Of a stretch of 64,000 nt of DNA, positions 744 to 63,661 are shown piece after piece (position 1 is the stretch's first letter; every line of letters starts with the position of its first letter). Location of the stretch: positions 496,001 to 560,000 of the forward strand of contig MU008151.1 in NCBI GenBank assembly GCA_010909165.1, read 5' to 3'. This DNA is from Anthoceros angustus. Taxonomy: Eukaryota > Plantae > Anthocerotophyta. Below the pieces are notes generated by a model that had not been told where the DNA came from, made no database searches, and worked only from the letters and a program-made list of their open reading frames with translations. The translations under genes and the position numbers were made by a program.

Positions 744-3458
744 ATGGAAGTTTCATGTGGCGGTTTGGAGCTGGGTTTAGGGTTCAGGCTTAACTCCATA
801 GCGCAGGCTTGTGCGAATCTCAGAGTTGGGCACAGAGGGCGACATGGCCTCTTATTGCAACAGCTTTTATGCACCCGTCAGACACAAATTGGTGAGAACA
901 TATCAGGTCTTTTAGGAAAAGCTATCGGTGGCCTGTCTTCAGGGGCTGAACTCTTAGCAAACAAGGAAGCCTCGAGTGGCAGCAGGCTTCCAACCAATTC
1001 ATCTCGTCCGGGAGAATGTCTGGTTGGGGAAAGGAATGGTGGGCGCCAGGAGCTCTTGTTGCCAGAGTCTTTTCTGGACCACAAACTTTGGTACAAGCCA
1101 CCTTTGGTGGACGCTCAGCTAGCTGCTCTGGATATGCAGGTGGGTCGTCGTGGTCGTGGTCCTGGCCCTACATCTCAATCGGGGCTGCTGGATGAATTTG
1201 ACCTTAGCAGGCCTGCAGGTGCAGTAACTGCTCAGACGGTATGCAGACTATGTGAGCAGGGGCAGCTCACTGAGGCTGTTGAGGCTCTGGGAGTACTGGT
1301 GGAGACAGACTGTCGAATTTTCCAGTCCCTCTTTTATACTGTGCTGAAAAAATGTGCGGGTAAGAAGGATCTGGTTCTGGGTCGCCGTGTCCATGCCCTT
1401 ATCGTAAAAAAGGGGCATGAGTCGGACACTTTCCTGTGCAACCACATCCTGCGGATGTATGCTTCTCATGCCCGGTTGCAAGACGCGATGGATGTGTTCA
1501 CCATGGTGCTCAACCCAGATGCGTTCACGTGGTCTGCCATAATCTCTGCCCATGTTCAGCATGGGCAAGGTAGAAGGGCCATAGAACTGTATTATCAGAT
1601 GGGCAGGTCGAGTGTGAAGCCAGATGGCCATGTGTTCATAGCAGCTCTTCAGGCGTGTGCCAGTGTGGGAGACTTGAAAACGGGGCAACAGGTGCATGCT
1701 GATGTGGTGGCCAGTGACGTTGAGCCTGGTTTGTTCCTTTCTAGTTGCTTGGTGGACATGTATGCAAAGTGCGGCAGCCTCGAGGATGCGCAGGGTGTGT
1801 TTGATGAACTTGGCCAGAAGGATGTGGTGACATGGACCAGTTTGATAACAGGATATTCTCAGCAGGGCATGGGTCAGAAAGCTCTTCATCTTTACAGTTC
1901 AATGCAAGAAGAAGGCGTGGTGGCACCTGATGCTGTTACATTTGTGTCCCTCCTCCAGGCATGTGCAAGTGTGGGTAATTCGGGCTTGGAGATGGGGAAG
2001 CAGCTTCATGCACAGATTGGAGAGCAAGGTCTTCAGGCTGATGTAGTTGTGGGTTGCAGCCTGGTGAACATGTATGCAAAATGTGGCAGCCTTAAGGATG
2101 CCCAGAGCGTGTTTGACAAACTTTCTCAGAAGAATGTGGTGACGTGGAATGCCATGATAGCAGGATACTCCCAGCAGGGCATGGGACAGGAAGCCCTTCA
2201 TCTTTACGGTGTTATGCAACAAGAAGGCGTGATTGCACCTGATTCTGCCACCTTTGTTTCCCTCCTGCAGGCATGTGCAAGTGTGGGTAACCCGGCTTTG
2301 GAGAGGGGGAAGCAGCTTCATGGACGGATTGGAGAACAAGGACTTCAGGCTGATGTGGTTCTCACCAACAGTTTAGTGAACATGTATGCAAAGTGTGGCA
2401 GCCTAGAGGATGCTCAGGGTGTATTTGATGGACTTGAGCAAAAAAATGTGGTGACATGGACCACTCTGATAGGAGGATATTCCCAGCAGGGCATGGGTCA
2501 GGAAGCCCTTCGTCTCTACAGTCTTATGGAAGCAGAAGGCATCGCTATAGCCGATTCTGTCACATTTGTATGCCTCCTGCAGGCTTGTGCAGATGTGGCA
2601 GCTCTGCATCGGGGAAGGGAGCTTCATCTTGAGATTCAAGAGCAAGGGCTCCAATCTGATGTGTTTGTGGCCATCAGTTTGGTAAACATGTATGCAAAAG
2701 CTGGGAGCATGAGTGATGCACAGCAGGTGTTTGATGCATTGCCCGAAAGAGACATTGTTGCCTGGAACGCCCTGATTGCTGGATACACCCGTCAAGGAGA
2801 CAGTAAGCTGGTCTTTAAGTTGATTCACCGGATGAAGGAGAATGGCATACCGCTAAACGGGATCACATTCCTCAGTATACTTACAGTGTGCAGTCATTCA
2901 GGTCTAGTCGACAAGGGGCAAGAATTTTTTGACGCTATGAGCAGACACCATGGCATTACTCCCACCCTGGAGCACTACACGTGCATGGTGGATCTCCTGG
3001 GTCGTGCAGGCCAACTCGACGAAGCACTAACAATGGTGAGCACGATGCCTGTACCGCCTGACGCTGCAGTTTGGCACACTTTATTGGGCGCCTGTGCAAA
3101 GTGGAGCAACGTGGAGATGGGACGCCGTGCTTTCGATAAAACAGTGAAGCTAAACGGAAGTGATGCTGCAGCATATGTGTTGATGTCAAACATATATGCC
3201 GGTGCCCAGATGTGGGACGAGGCAGAGAAGATGCAGGCCTGGAGAAAAGGAATTGGGGCATGGAAGCCACCAGGCCAGAGCTGGTGGACAGATTTGGGTG
3301 GACTGGTGCATACTTTTGTGGTTGGGGATGTCAAGCATCCCGAGAGTGCAGGTATATATGCAAGGCTTGAACAGCTTGGTCCCAGAATGAAGGAAGAAGG
3401 GTACGTCCCACATCTGGACATGTCATCGGGGGACATGTTTATGTTCACCAACTTGTGA
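744..3458 (+). CDS. PLS-class PPR protein with E1/E2 domains and a truncated WW-type DYW N-terminal part (E+-like); organellar RNA-editing factor family
   Basis: 904-aa single ORF with P-L-S triplets (VVTWNAMIAGY / TFVSLLQACA / LVNMYAKCGSL), P2-L2-S2 (HYTCMVDLLGRAG), E domains and the box KPPGQSWW..HTFVVGD..HP..GYVP. It stops before any HxE/CxxC motif. Confidence 0.93.
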   Translation: MEVSCGGLELGLGFRLNSIAQACANLRVGHRGRHGLLLQQLLCTRQTQIGENISGLLGKAIGGLSSGAELLANKEASSGSRLPTNSSRPGECLVGERNGGRQELLLPESFLDHKLWYKPPLVDAQLAALDMQVGRRGRGPGPTSQSGLLDEFDLSRPAGAVTAQTVCRLCEQGQLTEAVEALGVLVETDCRIFQSLFYTVLKKCAGKKDLVLGRRVHALIVKKGHESDTFLCNHILRMYASHARLQDAMDVFTMVLNPDAFTWSAIISAHVQHGQGRRAIELYYQMGRSSVKPDGHVFIAALQACASVGDLKTGQQVHADVVASDVEPGLFLSSCLVDMYAKCGSLEDAQGVFDELGQKDVVTWTSLITGYSQQGMGQKALHLYSSMQEEGVVAPDAVTFVSLLQACASVGNSGLEMGKQLHAQIGEQGLQADVVVGCSLVNMYAKCGSLKDAQSVFDKLSQKNVVTWNAMIAGYSQQGMGQEALHLYGVMQQEGVIAPDSATFVSLLQACASVGNPALERGKQLHGRIGEQGLQADVVLTNSLVNMYAKCGSLEDAQGVFDGLEQKNVVTWTTLIGGYSQQGMGQEALRLYSLMEAEGIAIADSVTFVCLLQACADVAALHRGRELHLEIQEQGLQSDVFVAISLVNMYAKAGSMSDAQQVFDALPERDIVAWNALIAGYTRQGDSKLVFKLIHRMKENGIPLNGITFLSILTVCSHSGLVDKGQEFFDAMSRHHGITPTLEHYTCMVDLLGRAGQLDEALTMVSTMPVPPDAAVWHTLLGACAKWSNVEMGRRAFDKTVKLNGSDAAAYVLMSNIYAGAQMWDEAEKMQAWRKGIGAWKPPGQSWWTDLGGLVHTFVVGDVKHPESAGIYARLEQLGPRMKEEGYVPHLDMSSGDMFMFTNL

Positions 3459-16659: not shown

Positions 16660-19600
16660 ATGGATGCGCCGTATTCCGGCTCCTCGGGCCACGCCTACTC
16701 GGGGTCTTCCAAACGGCCGCACCCGCACTACGACCGGGAGCCAGCGGAGCGCAACGGGCGGCACAAGCGGCGGATGCACTACGTGGAGCAGCAGCGCCCG
16801 CCCCCGCCGCCGGTCAAGGCGCCGCCGGCGGAGGACACGGTGTTCCGGATACTGTGCCCGGGGTCCAAGATCGGGAGCGTGATCGGGAAGGCGGGGAGCA
16901 TCATCAAGTCGCTGAGGCAGGAGACGAGAGCGAAGATCAAGATCGTGGACGCGGTTCCCGGGGTGGACGAGCGCGTCATTATCATATCCTGCTCTGAGAA
17001 GGGGTACCGGGAGCGAGGTAAGGATAGGGACGGGGGCAGAGATGGAAGGTCCCGGGACGGGGATAGAGACGATAGTGACCGGGAACGAGAGCCGGGGCCT
17101 AGGGATAGAGACGGCAGGGACAGGGATGGGGACGACCGAGAGGGCGTCTCGCCTGCGCAGGAGGCTCTGTACCGCGTACATGCCCGGATTGTGGACGGGG
17201 AGAGCAACGAGGAGGATGTGGAGGACGAGGATGCTGCGCATCATTTTACTACCAGGCTGCTGGTGCCCAACAACCAGATCGGTTGCCTGCTTGGAAAGGG
17301 CGGCAAAATTATCGAGCAGATGAGGCATGAGACTGGGGCCCAAATCCGGATTCTGCCCAAGGACCAGCTCCCCGGCTGCGCTCTGCCCACTGATGAGCTT
17401 GTCCAGGTCTGTAAGCTTGTTTTTGTTTAGTTATTTTTCGTTTTGCGGGGTGGGCGGTAGTTGGGTTTGTTGGTGTTGCCTACGAGGTGGAGTGTGATGC
17501 AGGTGTATGGCGACCTGGCTGTCGTGAAGAAGGCTTTGCATGCGATCTCAGCTCGCCTGCAGGAGAATCCCCCTAGAGAACGGCTTCAAGGAGCATCTAT
17601 GTTGTCCCATCCGTCCCCGCTGCTTTCGGGGGGTTCCTTGTTATCTTCAGGGAATTTCCTGTCGCAAGTGAATTCTCTCATGGCTCCAGGTAATGGCGGG
17701 AGCCAGGGATTTCATCTGGGACCATCACTCTCCACGTTGGGTAGCCTAGGAGCGGGCGGTGGAGGAGGTTGGCAGTTTCGGTCACCCAATGGCCCCGTCC
17801 TTCCTTCCCGTGGCGGTGGTCCTCTGCATGGAGTGAAGGAGGCATCGGTCGACAACGAGCTCATCTTTCGCATTCTGTGGCCGAATGACAAAATCGGAAG
17901 TGTTATCGGAAAGAAGGGAAATATTATCAGACAACTTAGAGAGGAGACAGGTGCCCGAATAAAAATCGCTGATGCAGTTCCGGGTACAGAAGAACGGGTT
18001 ATTATTGTTTCTGCCAACGAGGTAACTGTTCTTGGAGCATCCCTTGTTGTGCATGACATGGCGGGTTTACCAGTGCTTATGGTGGATGCGGATTATGGCA
18101 CGTTCCAAGAGGTAGCTGACAAAGGGTTTTTGTTGACAGTCTCCAGATGAGGTGGTATCTCCAGCTGTGGATGCTGTCCTGCAGGTGCAAAATAGAGCAG
18201 CAGATTTTGGTGCAGAGAAGGATGGTACAACTACAACTAGGCTGCTTGTCCCCACAACCCAAATTGGTTGTTTGTTGGGGAAAGGGGGAAGCATAATATC
18301 AGAGATGCGGAAAGCCACACGTGCTACTATTCGGATTCTACCGAAGGATGCTTTGCCTCGATGTGCTTTGGAAACAGATGAGCTGGTTCAGGTGGGACAC
18401 CGGCATCTCATCCTTACTGGCTGCTCTCCAATACCAAGGAAAATAAACGCGTTTGAACGATGTATGGCTTAGCTGCGTGGACTTATTTATGCTGGCGTTT
18501 TTGTTTGCAGATTGTTGGTGATCTGAATGTTGCTCGAGAGGCTTTAGTCCAAATAACATCTAAGTTGAGGAGGAATTTTTTCCTCGAGCGAGATACAGGT
18601 GGGGGTGGAGGTAGTTACCAGTCCTCACTTTCTGCTCTTGGTCTTGGTGGTCATATTCCCTCAGGTTACGGAGTAGGACATGAGCCCGGATCACCAGGGG
18701 GAATGTACTCCTCTATGTCTGGATTAGGCTTACAAGGAGGACGGTTATCTTCTGGATACGGCAGTCTAGGCTCTCCTCCCGGATCTTGGGGTGTGCAGGT
18801 AAATCTCTTGCCTCCATAACTTGTATTTGTTTGTTGCCTGTCTGTTTTGTGTCGTGGCTTGTGAAATTCCTTTTGTTGCAAAAGGAGGTCAACGTAAGTC
18901 CAGTCCAGAGAATAGTATGGCTTAAATTTTGGTTAGGGTAAGCTTATCTGACGTTCCCTTGGAATGAAAGGGTGGTGGACTGGGCGACCTTGCCTCATTT
19001 GGTGGAGGTCTTGTGCATCAGATGCAGTCAAGTGGCGGAGGGTATGGAGGGTATGTTTTTTAAATTCATACTCTTGTTCATGCTCTACCTGTGCATGCTG
19101 TGCCTTCTGCATGAGTGATATCATGCTAGCTCAGTCCAATCTCTTAGATATTCGTTATTAGATAGATGCTCCATAAGCCTTCCAGCTGCCCTTTCATATC
19201 CCTTTACTTATATTAGTGTCAAGCCTTTACAGTAGCTAAAAGCTGATTCAAAAATCCAGGGGAGGCAGATCCATTGGTGGCCTTGTAACAAATCTAGCGG
19301 GTACAACCGTGGAAGTGGTGATACCAAATACCGCTGTGGGATCCGTTATTGGGAAGGGAGGGAGTAACATTGCCAATATCCGACAGGTATACACTGTGTA
19401 CTGCGGAGACATTGTTTCCTCTGGGGTGGGTGTTTGAAAACTTCATGATAGGGGTGGTTTAGAAACGCATTGTTGTGCATTAGCCAAAACTCAGCATTAC
19501 TGCTCCTGCAGCTGTCTGGTGCGAAAGTGAAGCTGCATGATCCAAGGCAGGGAACTGCGGACCGTGTCGTTGAAATTTCAGGAACACCAGAACAGACTCA

Positions 19601-40923: not shown

Positions 40924-41718
40924 CTATTGGTGAATCTTGGATGAAACTTTGGTGCCCACTACGTCACTGATGTGCTGTATTACGGGCTCAACCTGCACCA
41001 AAGGAGCATAGTGTATTCCATCATACACGACATTAAGAGACATAGACCAGTCATTCACATCTATAACCTTTTTGTCCCCAGTATCGTTATCATGATTTTC
41101 ACTACCACCATTCAAGCCGTCTTTGCTACCATACTCTTGTATTATAACTAACTTATTTTTTGAAGATTTAGCCCATATGCAGATATGTCTTTGTAACCCA
41201 ACACTTAACCATTGTGTGGCAAGTGCGTCTCCCCATAAGCCAATTTCATTTCTGGATAGTTTGTTATTGCCATCTTCCTCACCTCGATTCGCCCTAGATA
41301 TAATACACGCAATATCTTCTTTTGCTGCTGCAGATAACCTCATTTTGTGCATATAAGTAGCCATATCACTTACATCATGAGTTTCTTGTAATATTTCTGG
41401 AATATATTGCTCTAAATTATCAAGAGCAATAGGGTCTTGCATTTGAACCCTCATTTTAAACTCATCCATCGCCAATTCTCTTAATCTTGAAGATGAGATT
41501 TTTCCTTGTAACAAATAGGATATTGCATCAAACAAGCAGTCTCCAATATTATACACAAAATCCTTAGGCACCACAAGTGTTTGAAACTCAGCCATTATAT
41601 CGTCTTTCTCAACACCCTTTGCACACGCTAGCTTGTGAATATGAAAGGATGTGTAAATGTTAAACTTAAAAAATATGAAAACTGTATCACATATATAGTA
41701 GCTGAAGGATAAAACCAT
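40924..41718 (-). CDS. OTU-like cysteine protease (deubiquitinase-fold) ORF, AT-rich, probably mobile-element-borne
   Basis: GDCLFDAISY (catalytic Cys box), LRELA, WGDAL, ICIW, and YDGIHYAPL (catalytic His box). True start and exon structure uncertain. Confidence 0.72.
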   Translation of the reverse strand: MVLSFSYYICDTVFIFFKFNIYTSFHIHKLACAKGVEKDDIMAEFQTLVVPKDFVYNIGDCLFDAISYLLQGKISSSRLRELAMDEFKMRVQMQDPIALDNLEQYIPEILQETHDVSDMATYMHKMRLSAAAKEDIACIISRANRGEEDGNNKLSRNEIGLWGDALATQWLSVGLQRHICIWAKSSKNKLVIIQEYGSKDGLNGGSENHDNDTGDKKVIDVNDWSMSLNVVYDGIHYAPLVQVEPVIQHISDVVGTKVSSKIHQ

Positions 41719-44213: not shown

Positions 44214-47711
<3,498 letters not shown>

Positions 47712-48056: not shown

Positions 48057-51000
48057 TCAAGACGCGAGGCCCAGTTGAGCAGATAGCTTGGCGCATATGT
48101 TCTTCAAATCCCTGACGTACTCCTCAGGCTGCACAGACTTGACGACGAGGTAGTGCCGCTTAGCATTGGGATGGGTGGATGTCTGCCTTGACAAGCGGAG
48201 CTCGCACAAGAGGTCCCAAGGTCGGTTGTGGCAGGCTTGTAGGACCAGAGCTTTGAGGATGGCCTGTTCATGATGGCTGGTGACTGGCTGCCTCCCTGCT
48301 CCAGTTATGGTAAGACAGGTGCCTCCTGCATCCACTTCCCACCCATCGCTGTGAATGATGATGTGGCCGTGCTTTTGGACTATCCAAGCTGTTTCCAGGG
48401 GGATGGAAGGTGGTGTTCTGGAGAAGGATGGGTCCTGTCCTGGGAAGGTGGAGTAGAAGGTGCCATTAGGTTGGAGGTGATGTCCACCGACTCCTGGGAG
48501 GCCTAGCAGACTGGCTGCTGCATGTCCTGTGGCCCAGCAGACGATGTTCCTGCTCCCGTCGTCGATGGTGAAGCAGCCTGAGATGGGTGCAATGGAGGAG
48601 CCAAGGGTGTTGGGCTTCAGGTCCCTCCACAAGCATGCGCCGCCGCCTTGCCACTGGAATACTAGTTTCCGGACACGGACTACCCTGCCTCGGATTTCAC
48701 ACTTGGGAGGAGGATGTTTACCTGGGTAGCATGGTTGTAGGAGTCTGAGACCTGGGATTGCTTCTTCGGCAAACAGGCTGGAAACTGGGACTTCAGGAAT
48801 GTTGTGCACGGCCAGGACAGTGGCTGATGTACACCTGTAGCAACCGGTGGAGTCTGATGATGCATGTCGCAAAACACGGTGGCAGGTAAGAGTTGCTTCT
48901 TCCCCAAGTCCGGCAGGAAGGCTGGTTCGTGTGACACTGAAAAGAACCTTCGCCGTTTCTGGCCCCTCCAGGTCCTGGACAACAATTTCCACCCATTCGC
49001 TTCGCCATGGAGTGGGCCACGAGCTAGCTTCCTCCTTCGGACATTGCAGCAAGCTAATTTTCTTTACCCTGCCTGTAAATGATACCAGGTTGCCCGACAA
49101 CACGTTCGTTGAAGGAGTGCTAAGAGAACCAACTAGTCCCCTGGGGTACATCTGTGTCTCGTGATCATCGGATGGCTGATGAAGGGCATCCTTAAGGGTT
49201 AACACTCCAAGGACCATTCGATCTGCGACGAGCTTCTTGAAACTGTCGACACCTTCTGCAGGAAGGTTCAATATGACATCGGCTTCTCCTGAAGATGGCA
49301 CAGCCGACAATCCATTGCAGCAGAGGGTGGACGGAGCATGATCTGCTGGCTTCTGAGGTGGCATAGTCACACAGCTTGTGCTTGGAACACCCTGCAAGGT
49401 GGCAACTTGCAAGCTCCATACATGCATCCCAACACCAATGTCAGCTTTCCTCCCGTTCGTCTGTGATCTCTGTGCATGATGGGTCTCTAGCAGGTAGCAT
49501 TCTCCAACCCGCAGGGCCGTGTGATATTCCATAGCTTCCAAGCTGAACTCCAAGAGAATCTTGCTCTTTCTCCTTCCTTCTACGCTGTCACTTATCCTCA
49601 GCATCCCAGACTTACTGGCATGGACATCACAGCCTTCTTGGGCATTTCGATAGTAGTTAGACAATCCCAAACTCCTCTGATGTGAGACGGGGGGAAAACA
49701 GACCGAACACCCAAAGCTTTCAGAACCACGTCTTTCTCCAGTGCCATCTGGCAACATTGTGCTTGAGGTGATGCCGGTAATCTGAAAAGGATTGTCTCCT
49801 TTGCCTAAGAGCACAACAAAGCAGGGAAGAAAAAGGGCCTCTGCCATATACCGAGCTTGGCCGATCCCCTTCCATGTCACTGGGTGCTTGTAGGTGACCA
49901 TCAGGACGCTGAAGGTGCAGCGACCCTCTGTGCAGATAAGTTGCTCCAACACTTGCAGAGTATCCTCTTTTCGAGGACTTGGAGGCCACGGCAATTGCCT
50001 GATCCAAGTTGCTTCCACCAGATGAAAATGCAAGAAGGTTGTCATGGAATCCTCTGTGGAAGATCTGCTGTACAGTTTCCGCTTTAAAATGTTTGTCCAC
50101 GACAAGGGCTGTCCGTCTTCATCACAACCATCAACTGCCTCTTTGGATTTGCTAGAATGGAAACCCTCTACAACCAACAGATAGTTGCGGACCTCGTACA
50201 ATTTGTGCAAGCTCACGACTGAAGAAAAATCTGGGACGACTGCATCAATTGCCCCCGTCGCATCAACCAGCTGTAGCTTCCCTGTAAGTCTAGATACTTG
50301 CAAATATCCCAGAAATATGACACCGAGATCTGAGCCTGACAGTGTTCTGCGCAAGTACCTTCCATCCATGCCATCCGTCTGATTCTCGTTTTGGCCTAAC
50401 TTTGGGCTTACCATTCCGTTATGCCACAACACAGAGGTAGTGTCATGCCAGAAAATTCTCATTTGCTTGAGCACATTGGAAATTGGCGGAATCTGCAAGC
50501 CATGGTTGGTCGGGAACAACTCGCTCAAAGTGCAAGCCTCGTCATGATGCATGAACTCCTTCATATGATTCCGCTTCTTGACTGTCGGAGGGCAAATTGC
50601 ACCGAGAGACAAATACTCCTGGGTGAGGCCGAAACCCTTCTTCGTACCGAAAAGCTCCTCCCGGTTGTAGATGCCCTGAAATTTCGAGCAAAAACTTGCC
50701 ATCACGAGCAAGTACCAAAGTGTTGAGGCAAATGTAAGATGTTCCAGGCGCTTGCTAAGAGTGCTCTGAAAGGGCTCATGGACATGATGGAGGACGTTGA
50801 GAGCAGAGATGCTTTCCACTATAAGATGAGATCGTGAACAAGCACCCAGTAGAACAGACTCGGTGCAGTGATTGCTGATGACGAGTTTGTGTACATTGTA
50901 TGCACTAATGGTGGCTCCAGCTCGAAGGTTGCGCAGCCCAATGTTCCTATGGTGTGTCAGCAATAGCAACACACTCCCATCAATCTCTACCACGGAGCCC

Positions 51001-52133
51001 TGCTCAAACAGACCCGTGACAGTCCCTTTGTAGGATGTCACCGCACCATTACCTACTGCCACGAGCTCTTTAGGCCCCAGCTTCCAGAAACTTCCTTCCG
51101 GAAAACACACACTGCTGCTCCCCTCAACCCGCAGGACCTTTCTCCTCCTACCATCGTCATCATGCCCTACACCTTTCAATCTGCATTCAGCTTCAACAAT
51201 GGTTGAAGGCAGAATCATAGAGGTCCTAGTTGCAACGTAAAAACTGTACATGACTCCATCAGCCTTGAGACTCTTCCTACGGAGTCCAGTTATACCAACG
51301 CATTGGCCCAATGATACCGACAAAACTGGCCGCCAACAAGAGACAGCCTCAGAAAAATACACATGCCACAAATTGCTCTTCTGCCCCTTGGACAGACCAT
51401 CATCAGATAGCACAGCCCCCGATCCTGTGCTCATCCCCGGACACCCACTACTACAAACCGGGCCGGCATCCCCCCTGTCCACCGTACGCCCTTCATCCTG
51501 TGCCCCACAACTCTCCTGCTCATCTAGGAGGCACTGACAGCGGGCCTCATGCCTGCAAGCTCCTAATTCCACCATAAACCCTAGCATCGACTGCTGGGAA
51601 TGCTTCCCCAACCTGTGCTGCCTCGATTGGCAAACAACAGGATCCGATTCTTCAGCCCTGTGCCCCTGGGGAAGGAAAAACGGAGGGCTGATGCACTGCA
51701 GAAATCCCTGAATCTCCAGCCGTTTCCCCTTCCCAGACTTCCCCAGGGGACTCTCCAGCACATGATCCCTGGCATCGGCAGAGCCGGGATCGACACAAAG
51801 AGAAGGAAAACTCTCCCTGGCATAGCTGAAACACGGCCTTCCCACAAGCTCCAGGCTCAGAACCTCCAGCAATCCTCTGCTCTGCTCCAAAACCCCTCCC
51901 GCTGTGTACATCCAGGCCTTGATTCGCACCGTCTGGTTCAAGAGCCGGCAATCAAAGCGGGGAATGTGACAACAAACACTTCCAGAAGAATCCGACAGCG
52001 CCAGACATTCTTCCAAAATCCCGCTGCCCTTATGCCGATTGCAGAGCTGCAGCTTCCCGACAATCCAGCTCTCGGCCTCACCTGAAGAAGAACAGGGCGT
52101 GCTGCTCTCTTCCAGAACCGCCACGGTGACCAT
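48057..52133 (-). CDS. CTC1: CST complex subunit CTC1 (telomere maintenance), single exon
   Basis: ~1360-aa multi-OB-fold-like ORF with plant CTC1 signatures LSDSSGSVCC..FD.R..IKAW, ITGLRRK, YKGTVTG, LRAGATISAYNVH, LLGAC, LQLVDATGAIDAVVPD, IDDGS. First ATG at 52133. Confidence 0.82.
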   Translation of the reverse strand: MVTVAVLEESSTPCSSSGEAESWIVGKLQLCNRHKGSGILEECLALSDSSGSVCCHIPRFDCRLLNQTVRIKAWMYTAGGVLEQSRGLLEVLSLELVGRPCFSYARESFPSLCVDPGSADARDHVLESPLGKSGKGKRLEIQGFLQCISPPFFLPQGHRAEESDPVVCQSRQHRLGKHSQQSMLGFMVELGACRHEARCQCLLDEQESCGAQDEGRTVDRGDAGPVCSSGCPGMSTGSGAVLSDDGLSKGQKSNLWHVYFSEAVSCWRPVLSVSLGQCVGITGLRRKSLKADGVMYSFYVATRTSMILPSTIVEAECRLKGVGHDDDGRRRKVLRVEGSSSVCFPEGSFWKLGPKELVAVGNGAVTSYKGTVTGLFEQGSVVEIDGSVLLLLTHHRNIGLRNLRAGATISAYNVHKLVISNHCTESVLLGACSRSHLIVESISALNVLHHVHEPFQSTLSKRLEHLTFASTLWYLLVMASFCSKFQGIYNREELFGTKKGFGLTQEYLSLGAICPPTVKKRNHMKEFMHHDEACTLSELFPTNHGLQIPPISNVLKQMRIFWHDTTSVLWHNGMVSPKLGQNENQTDGMDGRYLRRTLSGSDLGVIFLGYLQVSRLTGKLQLVDATGAIDAVVPDFSSVVSLHKLYEVRNYLLVVEGFHSSKSKEAVDGCDEDGQPLSWTNILKRKLYSRSSTEDSMTTFLHFHLVEATWIRQLPWPPSPRKEDTLQVLEQLICTEGRCTFSVLMVTYKHPVTWKGIGQARYMAEALFLPCFVVLLGKGDNPFQITGITSSTMLPDGTGERRGSESFGCSVCFPPVSHQRSLGLSNYYRNAQEGCDVHASKSGMLRISDSVEGRRKSKILLEFSLEAMEYHTALRVGECYLLETHHAQRSQTNGRKADIGVGMHVWSLQVATLQGVPSTSCVTMPPQKPADHAPSTLCCNGLSAVPSSGEADVILNLPAEGVDSFKKLVADRMVLGVLTLKDALHQPSDDHETQMYPRGLVGSLSTPSTNVLSGNLVSFTGRVKKISLLQCPKEEASSWPTPWRSEWVEIVVQDLEGPETAKVLFSVTRTSLPAGLGEEATLTCHRVLRHASSDSTGCYRCTSATVLAVHNIPEVPVSSLFAEEAIPGLRLLQPCYPGKHPPPKCEIRGRVVRVRKLVFQWQGGGACLWRDLKPNTLGSSIAPISGCFTIDDGSRNIVCWATGHAAASLLGLPGVGGHHLQPNGTFYSTFPGQDPSFSRTPPSIPLETAWIVQKHGHIIIHSDGWEVDAGGTCLTITGAGRQPVTSHHEQAILKALVLQACHNRPWDLLCELRLSRQTSTHPNAKRHYLVVKSVQPEEYVRDLKNICAKLSAQLGLAS

Positions 52134-52331
52134 GGCGGGCTTGGTGGACGCCACGCGCGATTCATGGATATGAAAAGGGGCTTTATGCGTTTCCTTCTTC
52201 TTTCTGTTTTCGTCATTCGTCGACAAGAGTCCGCCACAAGGAGCCCGGCTCTCAGACGCGACTCAGAAACGACTCAGACACGAGTCACGAGCGAACCAAA
52301 GAGCGAGGTGTTTGCTTGAAGGCGTTCGATC

Positions 52332-56818: not shown

Positions 56819-59723
56819 TCACGGTCGACCCTTACAACTGCAACAACCAGCTGCGAATCGATGCACACGGTACCCATCCCTTACAACGATGTCTCTCTGT
56901 TCAAGCCTTGACATGATCTCCGTGGAACTGTGGCAGTCACTGCACATGCGTAGATTCTTTGTTACTACCAGAGGTGTCCCACTCGGAGTGTTCAAGAGTC
57001 CAAAAGCCAGAGCTAGTTTCTCAGCATGCCCACAAAGCGCATCTTCCTTTTCCTTCTCACTCAGTGGCTTCAACACCAGTCTTGTGTGAGGTACATGGCC
57101 TCCCTCCTGCTTCAGACGTGCATTCGTGCTCTCCACCTTTAGCGCAATATCATGTCTCCTTTCTCCCACCGCAAATGTATGTACCTGCCTCTTCACCTCA
57201 ATGGTCGCCACTGCAGGTTTCTTGTTAGCTCCTGCTACCATTCTTTGCGTTTCAATCCTGTCTGCATCGCTCCACCTACCTGCATCTGCGTAGGCATTGG
57301 CCATGAGTACGTATGCGGAGGCCTGCTGAGGTCCAGCCTAACAATGCTTTCAAAGCACCACATCGCCCTCTTTATATCGCCGTGACTTTTGCAGGCATTC
57401 AGCAAAGACATCAAGCCCACAACATTACTTTGGCCCGCACATGATAGGAGCATATTCTCGGCCTCATCTAAATGGCCTGCACGCCCAAGAAGATCAATCA
57501 TGCAATTGTAATGCTCAGTTGTAGGTTTGATGCCATGCTGTTCAGCCATGGAATTAAAGTGCTTGCGACCCTCATGGACCAGTCCTCATGACTGCATGCT
57601 ACTAGAAGGCAAGTAAAAGTAGCATCATTAGGCTGAACACCGGCAACTAACATCTCCTCAAAACAAGCTAGTGCCTTGTGACCTTCATCACAAGTACCAT
57701 ACCCAGATATCAGGGCATTCCATGTCACCACATCCTTTGTGTTCATGCTGTCAAAAACCTGGCGTGCATCTTCCAGTTCACCACATTTTGCATACATGTC
57801 TACCAGGCAGGTGCCCACCACTATGTTATCCAGCAGTCCTCTTTCGACAATCTGTGAGTGCAGCTGCCTGCCCTTCTGTAAGGCACCAGTGCTTGCACAG
57901 GCCTTCAGAAGGCAAGCAAAAGTAACATGGTCAGCCAAAATGAGGCCCTCCTGCTCCATTTGTCCATACAACAAGCGCCTCTGGCCGAGTCCTTGCTGTG
58001 CATACCCAGCAATCAGGGCGGTCCATGTCACCACATCCTTTGCGGCCAAGCTGTCAAAAACCTGGCGTGCATCTTTCAGTTCACCACATTTTGTATACAT
58101 GTCCACCAGGCAGTTGCCCACCACTATGTCATCCAGCAGTCCTCTTCCGACAATCTGTGAGTGCAGCTGCCTGCCCTTCTGTAACGCACCAATGTTTCCA
58201 CAGGCCTTCAGAAGGCAAGAAAAAGTAACATGGTCAGCCAAAATGAGGCCCGCCTCCTCCATTTGTTCATACACACCAAGCGCCTCTTGGCTGAGTCCTT
58301 GCTGTGCATACCCAGCAATCAGGGCATTCCAAGTCACGACATCCTTTGTGTTCATGCTGTCAAAAACCTGGCGTGCATCTTCCAGTTCACCACATTTCAC
58401 ATACATGTCCACCAGGCAGGTGCCCACCACTATGTTATCCAACAGTCCTCTTTCAACAATCTGTGAGTGCAGCTGCCTGCCCTTCTGTAAGGCACCAGTG
58501 CTTGCACAGGCCTTGAGAAGGCAAGCAAAAGTAACATAGTTGGCCAAAATCAGCCCCTCCTGCTCCATTTGTGCATACACAACAAGAGCCTCATGTCCAA
58601 GGCCTTGCTGAGAATACCCAGCGATCAGCACCGTCCATGTCACCACATCCTTGGCGGCCATGCTGTCAAAAACCTCGTGTGCATCTTTCAGTTCGCCACA
58701 TTTTGCATACATGTCCACCAGGCAGCTGCCAACGAACAAGTTAGTAGGAATACCACTCTGCACCACATCATAGTGCACTCTCCTGCCAGATTCCAAGTCG
58801 GCGGCTAGTGCACAAGCTCTAAGCGCAGCAGCAAAGACATGCGCATCCGCCTTCACTCCTGACCTACGCATGTCATGGTACAGTTGTACGGCCTCCTTAG
58901 GTTTCCCATGCTTAGCATATGCAGAGATTATGGAAAACCACATGAAGGCATTTGGTTTGCCCACCGTGGTGAACACATCCATGGCCTCCTGCAGACTACC
59001 TCCACATGCATACATGCGCAAGATATGGTTCCCCAAGTATGCATCGGACTCGTACCCGAGTTTGACAGTGAGGTCATGAACTCGTCGCCCCACAACCAAA
59101 TCCTTCTTAGCTGTACACAGTTTCAGCACAGTGCAAAACAGAGACTGAGAAATTGCAGAGTCTGTCTGCGCCAGAGATTCCAGGGCTCCAACGGCCTCAG
59201 AAAGCTTCCCCCGCTCACACAACGTCCTCACGGTTACAGCCGTAACGACGCCCATGTCCGAACCTCCACGCCTGCCAGGTTCAGGCCTATCCGAAGAGCT
59301 GGACTCGGAAGGAGAGGCACCAATACCCATCTGCATATCCAAGGAAACGAGCTGCTCATCAACCCAAGCTGGCTTAAACATGTTGTCTAACCACAGCACC
59401 TCGCCAGACCCCTTACGACGGAAGTCAGGCGAACGGGAGCTCTTCTTCTCTCGTCTATTGTCCCACCACATGGCAGGGTCCAGAAAAAATTGCTGCCACA
59501 ACTGTTCCTGCTCTTGGCGACGACCATCCTTGGAAAACCCATTTCGAGCCGCACATTCTGTCGGAAGTGGAAGTGCTTGGGTCCTTACACTGCTGCACCT
59601 GGAGCCTTCGTTTGCCAGGGCTTGACTCCCTGAGATCAGGTGAGCAGGAGCTCCTCCTAGAATCCCTGTACGCACATCAATTTGCTGGGTCCAAAACGGA
59701 TCGGGCTGCCATATTGTCGTCAT
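56819..59723 (-). CDS. PLS-E-DYW:KP (GRP-terminated) PPR protein, candidate U-to-C RNA-editing factor; interrupted by single-base indels at ~57584 and ~57331
   Basis: Three overlapping ORFs (57498-59723, 57235-57549, 56819-57304) join into PLS array, P2L2S2, E1, E2, KKPAVATIEV box, GHAEKLALAFGL, KNLRMCSDCH, HRF..CSCKGRP*. Confidence 0.9.

Positions 59724-62517: not shown

Positions 62518-63661
<1,144 letters not shown>

What the first reader, a model, noticed from the sequence alone, without database searches (positions are those of the whole stretch)
59349..59501. OSB-type PDF ssDNA-binding-like motif fused N-terminally to the editing PPR
Seen: LWQQFFLDPAMWWDNRREKKSSRSPDFRRKGSGEVLWLDNMFKPAWVDEQL lies in frame ahead of the PPR array. 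Established: WWDNR..K...PDF..K..GE.LWL...P.WV is the PDF motif of plant organellar ssDNA-binding (OSB) proteins. Inference: a PDF + PLS + DYW:KP architecture could tether the editor to nucleoids, transcription bubbles or R-loops (co-transcriptional editing), or act as a built-in general nucleic-acid-binding cofactor in a lineage without MORF proteins. It may correspond to a conserved N-terminal extension already noted in hornwort PPRs, but I know of no demonstrated function.
Basis: partly seen in the sequence, partly recalled or inferred. Interest (0 to 1): 0.8.

Follow-up and report, generated by a model that had tools for sequence, protein, structure and literature searches.

The report
OSB-type PDF domain on PPR editor
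[quoted passage not shown] The pairing is old, common in seedless plants and apparently undescribed, but it is not special to U-to-C editors, its job is untested, and this copy has a broken reading frame.

Summary
The 51-residue peptide is at 59349-59501 (-), residues 75-125 of a 741-aa ORF that continues into a PLS PPR array.

It is a true PDF domain:
- Exhaustive phmmer gave 643 hits, including named OSB1 and OSB3.
- A profile built only from OB-fold-bearing OSB proteins matches it end to end (78 bits, E 1.6e-23), and it is the only match in the window.
- AlphaFold gives a compact helix-three-strand-helix module (pLDDT 95) between a disordered N-terminus and a flexible linker.
- No solved structure resembles it.

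- N-terminal PDF-PPR fusions also occur in mosses, a liverwort, lycophytes and ferns, and many of those proteins end in canonical DYW. The fusion is therefore not tied to DYW:KP.
- Every named fusion came from a seedless (MORF-less) lineage, but the sampling was biased.
- The window gene carries two 1-nt frameshifts (57584/5 and 57330/1) plus a garbled in-frame stretch, while 10.4 kb of other long ORFs nearby are intact. It is probably a young pseudogene.

The function proposed (an auxiliary binder of single-stranded nucleic acid) is inferred, not shown. No searched paper describes the fusion. This scan has noted the same fusion on other pieces of this genome. Read evidence could not be obtained.

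The parts
59532..59723 (-). N-terminal about 64 residues ahead of the domain: start codon at 59723, probable organelle-targeting or disordered leader
   Evidence: First ATG directly follows an in-frame stop. pLDDT is 40-47 with no secondary structure. It does not align to relatives, whose leaders are of similar length, about 40-88 aa.
59328..59531 (-). PDF domain (residues 65-132).
   Evidence: OSB-only profile E 1.6e-23. phmmer hits to named OSB1 and OSB3. AF2 pLDDT 94.8 alone and 93-97 in context, order helix-strand-strand-strand-helix. Atlas fold matches TM 0.91-0.95 to plant SSB-domain and PPR clusters.
59244..59327 (-). Ser/Pro/Gly-rich flexible linker (residues 133-160)
   Evidence: pLDDT 53-65 with no secondary structure. 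Unalignable to P0324 and P0150.
57586..59243 (-). PLS-class PPR array in the same frame as the PDF
   Evidence: Pfam PPR, PPR_1, PPR_2 and PPR_3, E down to 2.5e-78. Collinear with the intact relative P0324 at 56% identity.
57966..57984 (-). Garbled in-frame stretch (GQRRLLYG): apparent -1 and -2 deletions 13 nt apart
   Evidence: Comparison with the two sister repeats of the same gene and a 1-aa gap against P0324. This is an inference from paralogous repeats.
57584..57585 (-). Frameshift 1: a GG run where relatives need one more base. The 741-aa ORF ends at 57498 because of it.
   Evidence: Direct reading. tblastn of P0150 and P0324 switches frame here.
57330..57331 (-). Frameshift 2: a CC run where relatives need one more base
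   Evidence: Direct reading. tblastn switches frame here.
56819..57329 (-). E motif plus DYW:KP deaminase-like domain ending in GRP, in a third frame
   Evidence: Pfam DYW_deaminase 1.2e-33 and E_motif. KKPA box, HAEKLA, CSDCH, terminal GRP. 73% identity to P0324 with no stops in the corrected frame.

Best explanation
Shown: residues 65-132 of this gene product form a genuine, independently folded PDF domain. This is the roughly 50-aa module that gives plant OSB proteins their single-stranded-DNA binding. It sits between a disordered N-terminal leader and a flexible linker of about 28 residues, ahead of a PLS pentatricopeptide array. The gene ends in an E/DYW:KP (GRP-type) deaminase-like domain. 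The fusion is an old, recurrent architecture of PLS-class editing-type PPR proteins in seedless land plants, on C-to-U-type and KP-type proteins alike.

Inferred: the PDF keeps the OSB module's biochemical activity, because every signature residue is conserved at least as strongly on PPR proteins as on OSBs. It would act as a sequence-nonspecific grip on single-stranded nucleic acid on a flexible tether. PPR arrays bind RNA N-to-C along 5'-to-3', so the PDF would lie near the RNA 5' of the PPR footprint, or near exposed ssDNA of the nucleoid. It would raise local concentration and residence time while the PPR array supplies specificity and DYW supplies catalysis.

For this locus: the copy is most likely a young pseudogene, or at best encodes a truncated PDF+PLS protein. 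Two 1-nt deletions separate the array from E/DYW.
For: Homology.
Fold and domain boundaries: and 52 (TM 0.91 to a plant SSB-domain cluster, 0.85-0.95 to PPR and DYW clusters).
Conservation: signature residues are 91-100% conserved in 77 PPR-attached and 229 OSB-attached non-redundant PDFs. The PDF is 61% identical to the nearest intact relative against 56% for the whole protein, while leader and linker do not align.
Distribution: 15 of the 150 best representatives are PPR proteins, always with the PDF N-terminal. Taxa are Sphagnum, Ceratopteris, Adiantum, Pteridium (transcript-derived ORF), Selaginella and Diphasiastrum. 39 of 42 hits to a lycophyte PPR's PDF are further PPR proteins, the query itself aside. 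27 of the 119 nearest PPR relatives carry it.
Literature: the PDF motif is responsible, and in AtOSB1 sufficient, for ssDNA binding, and OSB1/2 prefer ssDNA over dsDNA or RNA (PMC6963530, PMC4166229, PMC6451138).
Pseudogene reading: frameshifts. Three other long ORFs in the window (904, 1161 and 1389 aa, 10.4 kb) are unbroken.
Against: No binding, localisation or editing data exist for any PPR-attached PDF.
OSB proteins are reported to prefer ssDNA over RNA, so an RNA-side role needs a shift in preference that nothing here shows.
PDF-less synthetic DYW:KP editors work (PMC9478123), and moss editing factors are routinely assayed without their N-termini (PMC10482289). The PDF is therefore at most an enhancer or recruiter. 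I could not check whether PPR56 has a PDF at all.
The other PPR-E gene in this window (744-3458) has no PDF.
All four indels are deletions in short runs. That pattern also fits long-read assembly error, and I could obtain no reads.
The leader is not a textbook presequence, with several acidic residues.
Confidence: 0.5

Rival explanations
1. Nucleoid, transcription-bubble or R-loop tether. The PDF keeps its ssDNA preference and holds the editor on single-stranded DNA of active organellar chromosomes, so editing happens co-transcriptionally.
For: The only measured activity of PDF motifs is ssDNA binding, preferred over RNA (PMC4166229, PMC6963530). Signature residues are unchanged on PPR proteins. 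A flexible linker would allow reach from DNA to nascent RNA.
Against: No localisation or DNA-binding data. Editing factors work on RNA in E. coli and human cells without such a tether (PMC9478123, PMC10482289). Not every PPR editing-type gene in this genome has a PDF.
Confidence: 0.2
2. Protein-protein or oligomerisation module. The PDF recruits the editor to OSB, RecA, Whirly-type or other editosome partners, or multimerises editors, rather than touching nucleic acid.
For: PDFs occur in 1-13 tandem copies in OSB-type proteins and 1-3 on PPRs, a pattern also seen for interaction modules. AtOSB2 is reported as a tetramer (PMC6963530). Most conserved residues are aromatic and could be core or interface.
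Against: The literature assigns ssDNA binding to the motif itself. Conserved R and K positions fit phosphate contacts. No partner is known.
Confidence: 0.12
3. The gene is really intact and the frameshifts are local assembly errors. The locus would then encode a full PDF-PLS-E-DYW:KP protein of about 910 aa.
For: All four indels are deletions inside short homopolymer or dinucleotide runs. The shifted parts have no stops in their proper frames and stay 54-73% identical to P0324, with catalytic motifs intact.
Against: 10.4 kb of other long ORFs in the same window carry no such breaks. At the rate seen here, about 1.4 per kb, that would be very unlikely under uniform error.
Confidence: 0.3
4. Chance resemblance, or a segment lost from the mature protein with the targeting peptide or by splicing.
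For: No read or proteomic evidence for this locus.
Against: E 1.6e-23 to an OSB-only profile. A confident independent fold. Conservation in the same place across bryophytes, lycophytes and ferns, including a transcript-derived Pteridium ORF. The PDF lies in one uninterrupted ORF with the PPR array. A cleaved leader would not keep a folded domain's signature residues.
Confidence: 0.02

Closest known systems
PDF motif of plant organellar ssDNA-binding proteins (OSB1-4; Zaegel et al. 2006, as summarised in PMC6963530, PMC4166229, PMC13393729)
   Same: Same length (about 50-60 aa) and same signature: W, WWDxR, K, PDF(K/R)xK, LW, PxWV. There is an end-to-end profile match (E 1.6e-23) and the same predicted fold (TM 0.91 to a plant SSB-domain cluster).
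   Different: Here it is N-terminal, single, and followed by a PPR array, not C-terminal to an SSB-like OB fold. The protein has no OB fold. The hornwort/fern PPR-attached copies carry Lys before the invariant Pro (KPxWV) and Asp after WV, where seed-plant OSBs have D/T/N-P and K. Binding has not been tested.
PLS-class PPR-DYW:KP proteins, GRP subgroup (candidate U-to-C editors of hornworts; Gerke 2020 and Gutmann 2020 as cited in PMC9478123)
   Same: PLS array, E motif, a DYW-like domain with a KP(A) box in place of PG, HAE and CxDCH zinc motifs, and terminal GRP.
   Different: Descriptions found in the searched library do not mention an N-terminal PDF. This copy is interrupted by two frameshifts.
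Accessory factors of seed-plant editosomes (MORF/RIP, ORRM, OZ)
   Same: Possibly analogous in role: a non-specific helper that improves RNA binding or recruitment of a PLS PPR.
   Different: Unrelated folds, acting in trans rather than fused. MORF is seed-plant-only (PMC13386178), whereas the PDF-PPR fusions seen here are all from seedless plants. The analogy is a hypothesis only.
Phage hypothetical proteins, Phage_gp49 (PF25690) and Rad52-type annealing proteins
   Same: Atlas fold search lists two phage clusters at TM 0.69-0.73 over 57-61 residues and a Rad52 cluster at TM 0.44. The language-model search lists Phage_gp49 clusters at 0.77-0.82.
   Different: No sequence support: PHROGs, tblastn against phages, Pfam, BFVD Foldseek and PDB are all negative. 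For a 63-aa domain these scores are leads only.

Membership tests
PDF domain (OSB-type) | About 50-aa motif with the conserved Pro-Asp-Phe signature and flanking W/R/K positions | tested here: met
   All near-invariant columns of a 124-sequence alignment are present in the window copy.
PDF domain (OSB-type) | Significant match to a profile built from PDF motifs of bona fide OSB (SSB-fold plus PDF) proteins | tested here: met
   78.1 bits, E 1.6e-23, profile positions 1-59 of 60. The source proteins carry PF00436, and two are named OSB1 and OSB3.
PDF domain (OSB-type) | Same fold as the PDF of OSB proteins | tested here: met
   AF2 pLDDT 94.8. Atlas TM 0.91, rmsd 1.2 over 62 residues, to a Streptophyta cluster that is 97% PF00436. 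Both sides are predictions, and no solved PDF structure exists.
PDF domain (OSB-type) | Binds single-stranded DNA | not testable with these tools
   Needs EMSA or anisotropy with recombinant domain.
OSB protein family | SSB-like OB-fold domain N-terminal to the PDF motif(s) | tested here: not met
   Pfam finds only PPR/TPR-type families in the 741-aa ORF and nothing in residues 1-158. The PDF is followed by PPR helices. It shares a domain with OSBs but is not an OSB.
PLS-class PPR DYW:KP editing factor (GRP subgroup) | PLS PPR array followed by E motif and DYW-family deaminase domain | tested here: met
   Pfam PPR families, E_motif, and DYW_deaminase at 1.2e-33. Collinear with intact P0324 and P0150.
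PLS-class PPR DYW:KP editing factor (GRP subgroup) | KP box instead of PG box, HxE and CxxCH zinc motifs, C-terminal GRP | tested here: met
   KKPAVATIEV, HAEKLA, CSDCH...CSCKGRP*. The GRP subgroup is as described in PMC9478123.
PLS-class PPR DYW:KP editing factor (GRP subgroup) | One uninterrupted coding sequence | tested here: not met
   Frame changes at 57584/5 and 57330/1. Whether they are real or assembly errors is not settled.
PLS-class PPR DYW:KP editing factor (GRP subgroup) | U-to-C editing activity at a defined organellar site | not testable with these tools
   No organelle transcriptome or assay available.

The most novel reading that the evidence does not exclude
The N-terminal PDF is the ancestral built-in helper of PLS editing factors in all MORF-less land plants (bryophytes, lycophytes, ferns). 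It would be a tethered single-strand clamp that either holds the RNA 5' of the PPR footprint open or anchors the editor on displaced ssDNA, so that editing is coupled to transcription. On this reading it became dispensable when MORF proteins arose in seed plants. That would make an unrecognised third functional module of plant editing factors directly testable, and useful for designer editors.
Probability: 0.15. Interest if true: 0.85.

Novelty: new variant of a known kind. Interest (0 to 1): 0.6.

Why it matters
Plant organellar editing factors are described as PPR array plus E/DYW, and their N-termini are usually treated as targeting peptides and removed from constructs (for example PMC10482289). 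A conserved, folded, nucleic-acid-binding-type domain in front of many of them, in every seedless land-plant lineage sampled, would be an overlooked module.

It offers a concrete hypothesis for how MORF-less plants with hundreds to thousands of editing sites achieve efficient site engagement. It suggests a link between genome-maintenance proteins (OSB) and RNA editing. It also offers a small (about 65 aa) add-on to test on synthetic C-to-U and U-to-C editors.

It does not explain reverse editing as such. This locus is probably a dead copy, so the value lies in the family-level architecture.

Tried and rejected
1. Pfam on the N-terminal 158 aa found no family, so PDF is not in Pfam.
2. Word-index search with the window motif among proteins of 408-1297 aa found 5 candidates and no hit. 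This was a sensitivity limit, not absence, as the exhaustive search showed.
4. Exact-product look-ups of the 741-aa and 161-aa ORFs found nothing on record.
5. PDB by sequence gave only E 0.5-1.2 noise. PDB Foldseek gave nothing. VIA-align wide gave best Z 3.5, non-specific helical matches. BFVD gave nothing. PHROGs gave nothing for the window copy and isolated E 0.02-0.07 for other members. tblastn against phage genomes gave no match.
6. A tree of 124 PDF segments has too few columns (63), with 3 starred branches. PPR-attached PDFs cluster (6 changes against 17.1 in shuffles) and a single origin is not excluded, but neither origin nor direction can be claimed.
7. dN/dS was not attempted, because the nearest relative with DNA is 46-56% identical and synonymous sites are saturated.
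8. Group-specific residue differences between PPR and OSB PDFs are confounded by the Diphasiastrum-heavy sample, so I drew no functional conclusion from them.
9. The original OSB1 paper (PMC1785405) is not held, so its statements are cited second-hand from reviews.
10. A census of seed-plant PPRs for PDF was not possible. Only the best 150 of 643 hits are listed, and the other searches are biased to the query's relatives.
Full report
OBSERVATION. They are residues 75-125 of a 741-aa ORF (57498-59723, minus strand). Its first ATG directly follows an in-frame stop. Pfam assigns its remainder to PPR families, with PPR_2 at 2.5e-78. Pfam has no model for the N-terminal 158 residues.

IS IT A PDF MOTIF? 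I ran an exhaustive phmmer search of residues 68-130 against 1.84 billion representatives. It found 643 proteins at E<=1e-3, 169 at E<=1e-10 and 16 at E<=1e-30.
- Most hits are 260-500 aa with one to several matches in their C-terminal halves.
- Ten that I scanned carry the SSB/OB-fold family PF00436 ahead of the matches.
- Two are named by their sources as OSB1 (Populus) and OSB3 (Euphorbia).

The alignment of the window segment with OSB and PPR copies is collinear over about 60 columns. Invariant or near-invariant positions are W, F, P, W-W-D-x-R, K, P-D-F, K, L-W and P-x-W-V, and all are present here.

To avoid circularity I built a profile from 16 PDF segments of nine OB-fold-bearing OSB-type proteins only. 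It matches window residues 72-130 over positions 1-59 of 60 at 78.1 bits, E 1.6e-23. It finds nothing else in the six-frame translation of the 64-kb window.

FOLD AND DOMAIN LIMITS.
- With a 124-sequence alignment, AlphaFold2 predicts the 63 residues at mean pLDDT 94.8, in the order helix, three short strands, helix.
- In the context of residues 1-210, residues 1-60 are unstructured (pLDDT 40-47).
- Residues 65-132 are the PDF domain (pLDDT 93-97).
- Residues 133-160 are a low-confidence Ser/Pro/Gly-rich linker, and PPR helices start at about 161.
- The ESM-Atlas fold search returns plant PPR and DYW clusters (TM 0.85-0.95) and a plant cluster that is 97% PF00436 (TM 0.91).
- No solved structure matches by sequence, by Foldseek or by VIA-align over 48,161 chains (best Z 3.5).
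- BFVD, PHROGs and tblastn against phage genomes are negative.
- Two phage clusters at TM 0.69-0.73, a Rad52 cluster at 0.44 and Phage_gp49 clusters at feature score 0.77-0.82 remain weak leads for so short a domain.

THE GENE AROUND IT. Downstream of the 741-aa ORF the coding sequence continues in two other frames.
- tblastn of two intact relatives changes frame at 57585 and at about 57330. The relatives are P0150 (753 aa) and P0324 (950 aa), both PDF-PLS-E-DYW ending in GRP.
- Reading the DNA shows GG at 57584-57585 and CC at 57330-57331, where the conserved protein needs one more base each.
- A third lesion is in frame. Compared with the two sister repeats, one L-motif reads GQRRLLYG. This is explained by a 1-nt and a 2-nt deletion 13 nt apart, near 57982 and 57968.
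- The last frame encodes an E motif and a DYW-family domain (Pfam 1.2e-33) with a KPA box, HAE and CxDCH motifs and the terminal GRP. This is the GRP subgroup of DYW:KP described for hornworts (PMC9478123).

All four lesions are deletions in short runs, which could be long-read assembly errors. However, three other long ORFs in the same window are unbroken over 10.4 kb. They are a 904-aa PPR-E gene, a 1161-aa GH2 beta-galactosidase-like gene and a 1389-aa CTC1-like gene. At the indel density seen in this gene, that would be very unlikely under a uniform error rate.

I therefore read the copy as a young pseudogene (about 0.65) rather than an assembly artefact (about 0.3). It is young because the shifted parts have no stops in their proper frames and stay 54-73% identical to P0324.

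HOW WIDESPREAD IS THE FUSION? Among the best 150 representatives, 15 are PPR proteins, and in all of them the PDF is N-terminal, starting at residues 2-87. Named ones come from:
- Sphagnum compactum
- Ceratopteris richardii
- Adiantum capillus-veneris
- Pteridium aquilinum (a transcript-derived ORF)
- Selaginella moellendorffii
- Diphasiastrum complanatum (all)

A word search with the PDF of a Diphasiastrum PPR found 42 proteins. Two are SSB-domain OSB-type proteins and the other 40 carry PPR families: the query itself, about 30 further Diphasiastrum genes, seven Sphagnum proteins and a Calypogeia (liverwort) PPR-DYW. Many have two or three tandem PDFs, and many end in canonical DYW with a PG box.

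Of the 119 nearest full-length relatives of the window ORF, 27 carry N-terminal PDFs. None of these 27 comes from the seven seed-plant entries in that list (Ginkgo, Cryptomeria, Dioscorea). The fusion is therefore old, found in all seedless land-plant groups sampled, and not tied to DYW:KP.

That it is absent from seed-plant PPRs is only 'not seen' in biased samples. In a tree of 124 PDF segments the PPR-attached copies cluster (6 label changes against 17.1 in shuffles). The window copy pairs with P0150 (SH-aLRT 93). With 63 columns neither a single origin nor its direction can be established.

CONSERVATION. In 77 non-redundant PPR-attached and 229 OSB-attached PDFs the signature positions are 91-100% conserved in both sets. 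Several (second W, H, K after PDF) are more conserved on PPRs.

Between the window and P0324 the 51-aa motif is 61% identical against 56% for the whole alignment. The leader and linker do not align at all. A stretch that was merely part of a cleaved targeting peptide would not behave like this.

MECHANISM (INFERRED). Reviews citing Zaegel et al. 2006 state that the PDF motif is responsible, and in AtOSB1 sufficient, for ssDNA binding. They also state that OSB1/2 prefer ssDNA to dsDNA or RNA (PMC6963530, PMC4166229, PMC6451138).

The established geometry of PPR-RNA binding places N-terminal repeats at the 5' end of the footprint and DYW at the target. A PDF on a flexible linker of about 28 residues would therefore sit upstream of the cis-element. 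My best reading (about 0.5) is a sequence-nonspecific single-strand grip that increases recruitment or residence. The rivals are:
- a protein-interaction module (about 0.12)

The PDF is not needed for catalysis, since synthetic PLS-DYW:KP proteins without it edit U to C (PMC9478123). Moss factors are also assayed without their N-termini (PMC10482289), although I could not check whether PPR56 has a PDF.

KNOWN OR NEW? No paper in the searched library combines the PDF motif or domain with PPR proteins, and none notes an N-terminal extension of hornwort PPRs. A 2026 kingdom-wide survey of editing-factor domain fusions does not mention OSB or PDF. The 2026 OSB family study required both OB fold and PDF and so would have excluded these proteins.

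The primary papers by Gerke 2020 and Gutmann 2020 are not in the library, so prior mention cannot be excluded. This scan has recorded the same fusion many times on other pieces of this genome. I used those notes as leads and re-tested the points I rely on.

VERDICT. It is a known domain in a new, apparently undescribed architecture, which I class as a new variant of a known kind. The KP-specific and nucleoid-tether interpretations are unsupported or untested. This copy is probably non-functional.

Noticed in passing
window 57584-57585, 57330-57331, 57966-57984: The PDF-PPR-DYW:KP gene carries four small deletions (-1, -1, and a -1/-2 pair), all in short runs and with no premature stops in the corrected frames. 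This is either a very young pseudogene or local assembly error.
   Followed up: partly
window 744-3458 (+): A second, intact PPR gene (904 aa, PLS array plus E motif, no DYW) lacks any PDF. Not every editing-type PPR of this genome carries the domain.
   Followed up: partly
window 44214-47699 (-): An uninterrupted 1161-aa ORF encodes a complete LacZ-like GH2 beta-galactosidase (Glyco_hydro_2_N, Glyco_hydro_2_C, LacZ_4, Bgal_small_N). A single 3.5-kb exon is unusual for a plant gene of this family, so it may be a retrogene or an acquired gene.
   Followed up: no
window 48057-52226 (-): A 1389-aa single ORF has CTC1 (CST telomere-maintenance complex) domains and is also intronless as read.
   Followed up: no
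window 62518-63649 (-): A PCNA gene in at least three exons (PCNA_N 2.9e-54, PCNA_C) lies about 3 kb from the PPR gene. A KH-domain ORF is at 16660-17430 (+) and an OTU-like ORF at 40924-41718 (-).
   Followed up: partly
P0054 (Coptis chinensis, 1526 aa): A kinesin-motor protein model carries three PDF motifs (about residues 187-395) ahead of the motor domain. This is either another PDF fusion in a seed plant or a merged gene model.
   Followed up: no
P0001, P0003, P0009, P0011: Some OSB-type proteins hold 9-13 tandem PDF motifs, far more than the one to five described in the literature I read.
   Followed up: no
Fold search atlas rows 5 and 7; Two clusters of phage (Uroviricota) hypothetical proteins of 187-199 aa match the PDF model at TM 0.69-0.73. 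Phage_gp49 (PF25690) clusters are the nearest by language-model features (0.77-0.82). There is no sequence-level support.
   Followed up: partly
P0124 (Selaginella moellendorffii PPR): Selaginella is listed as having no OSB gene in PMC4166229, yet its PPR proteins carry a PDF. The domain outlives the OSB family there, or the OSB was simply missed.
   Followed up: no
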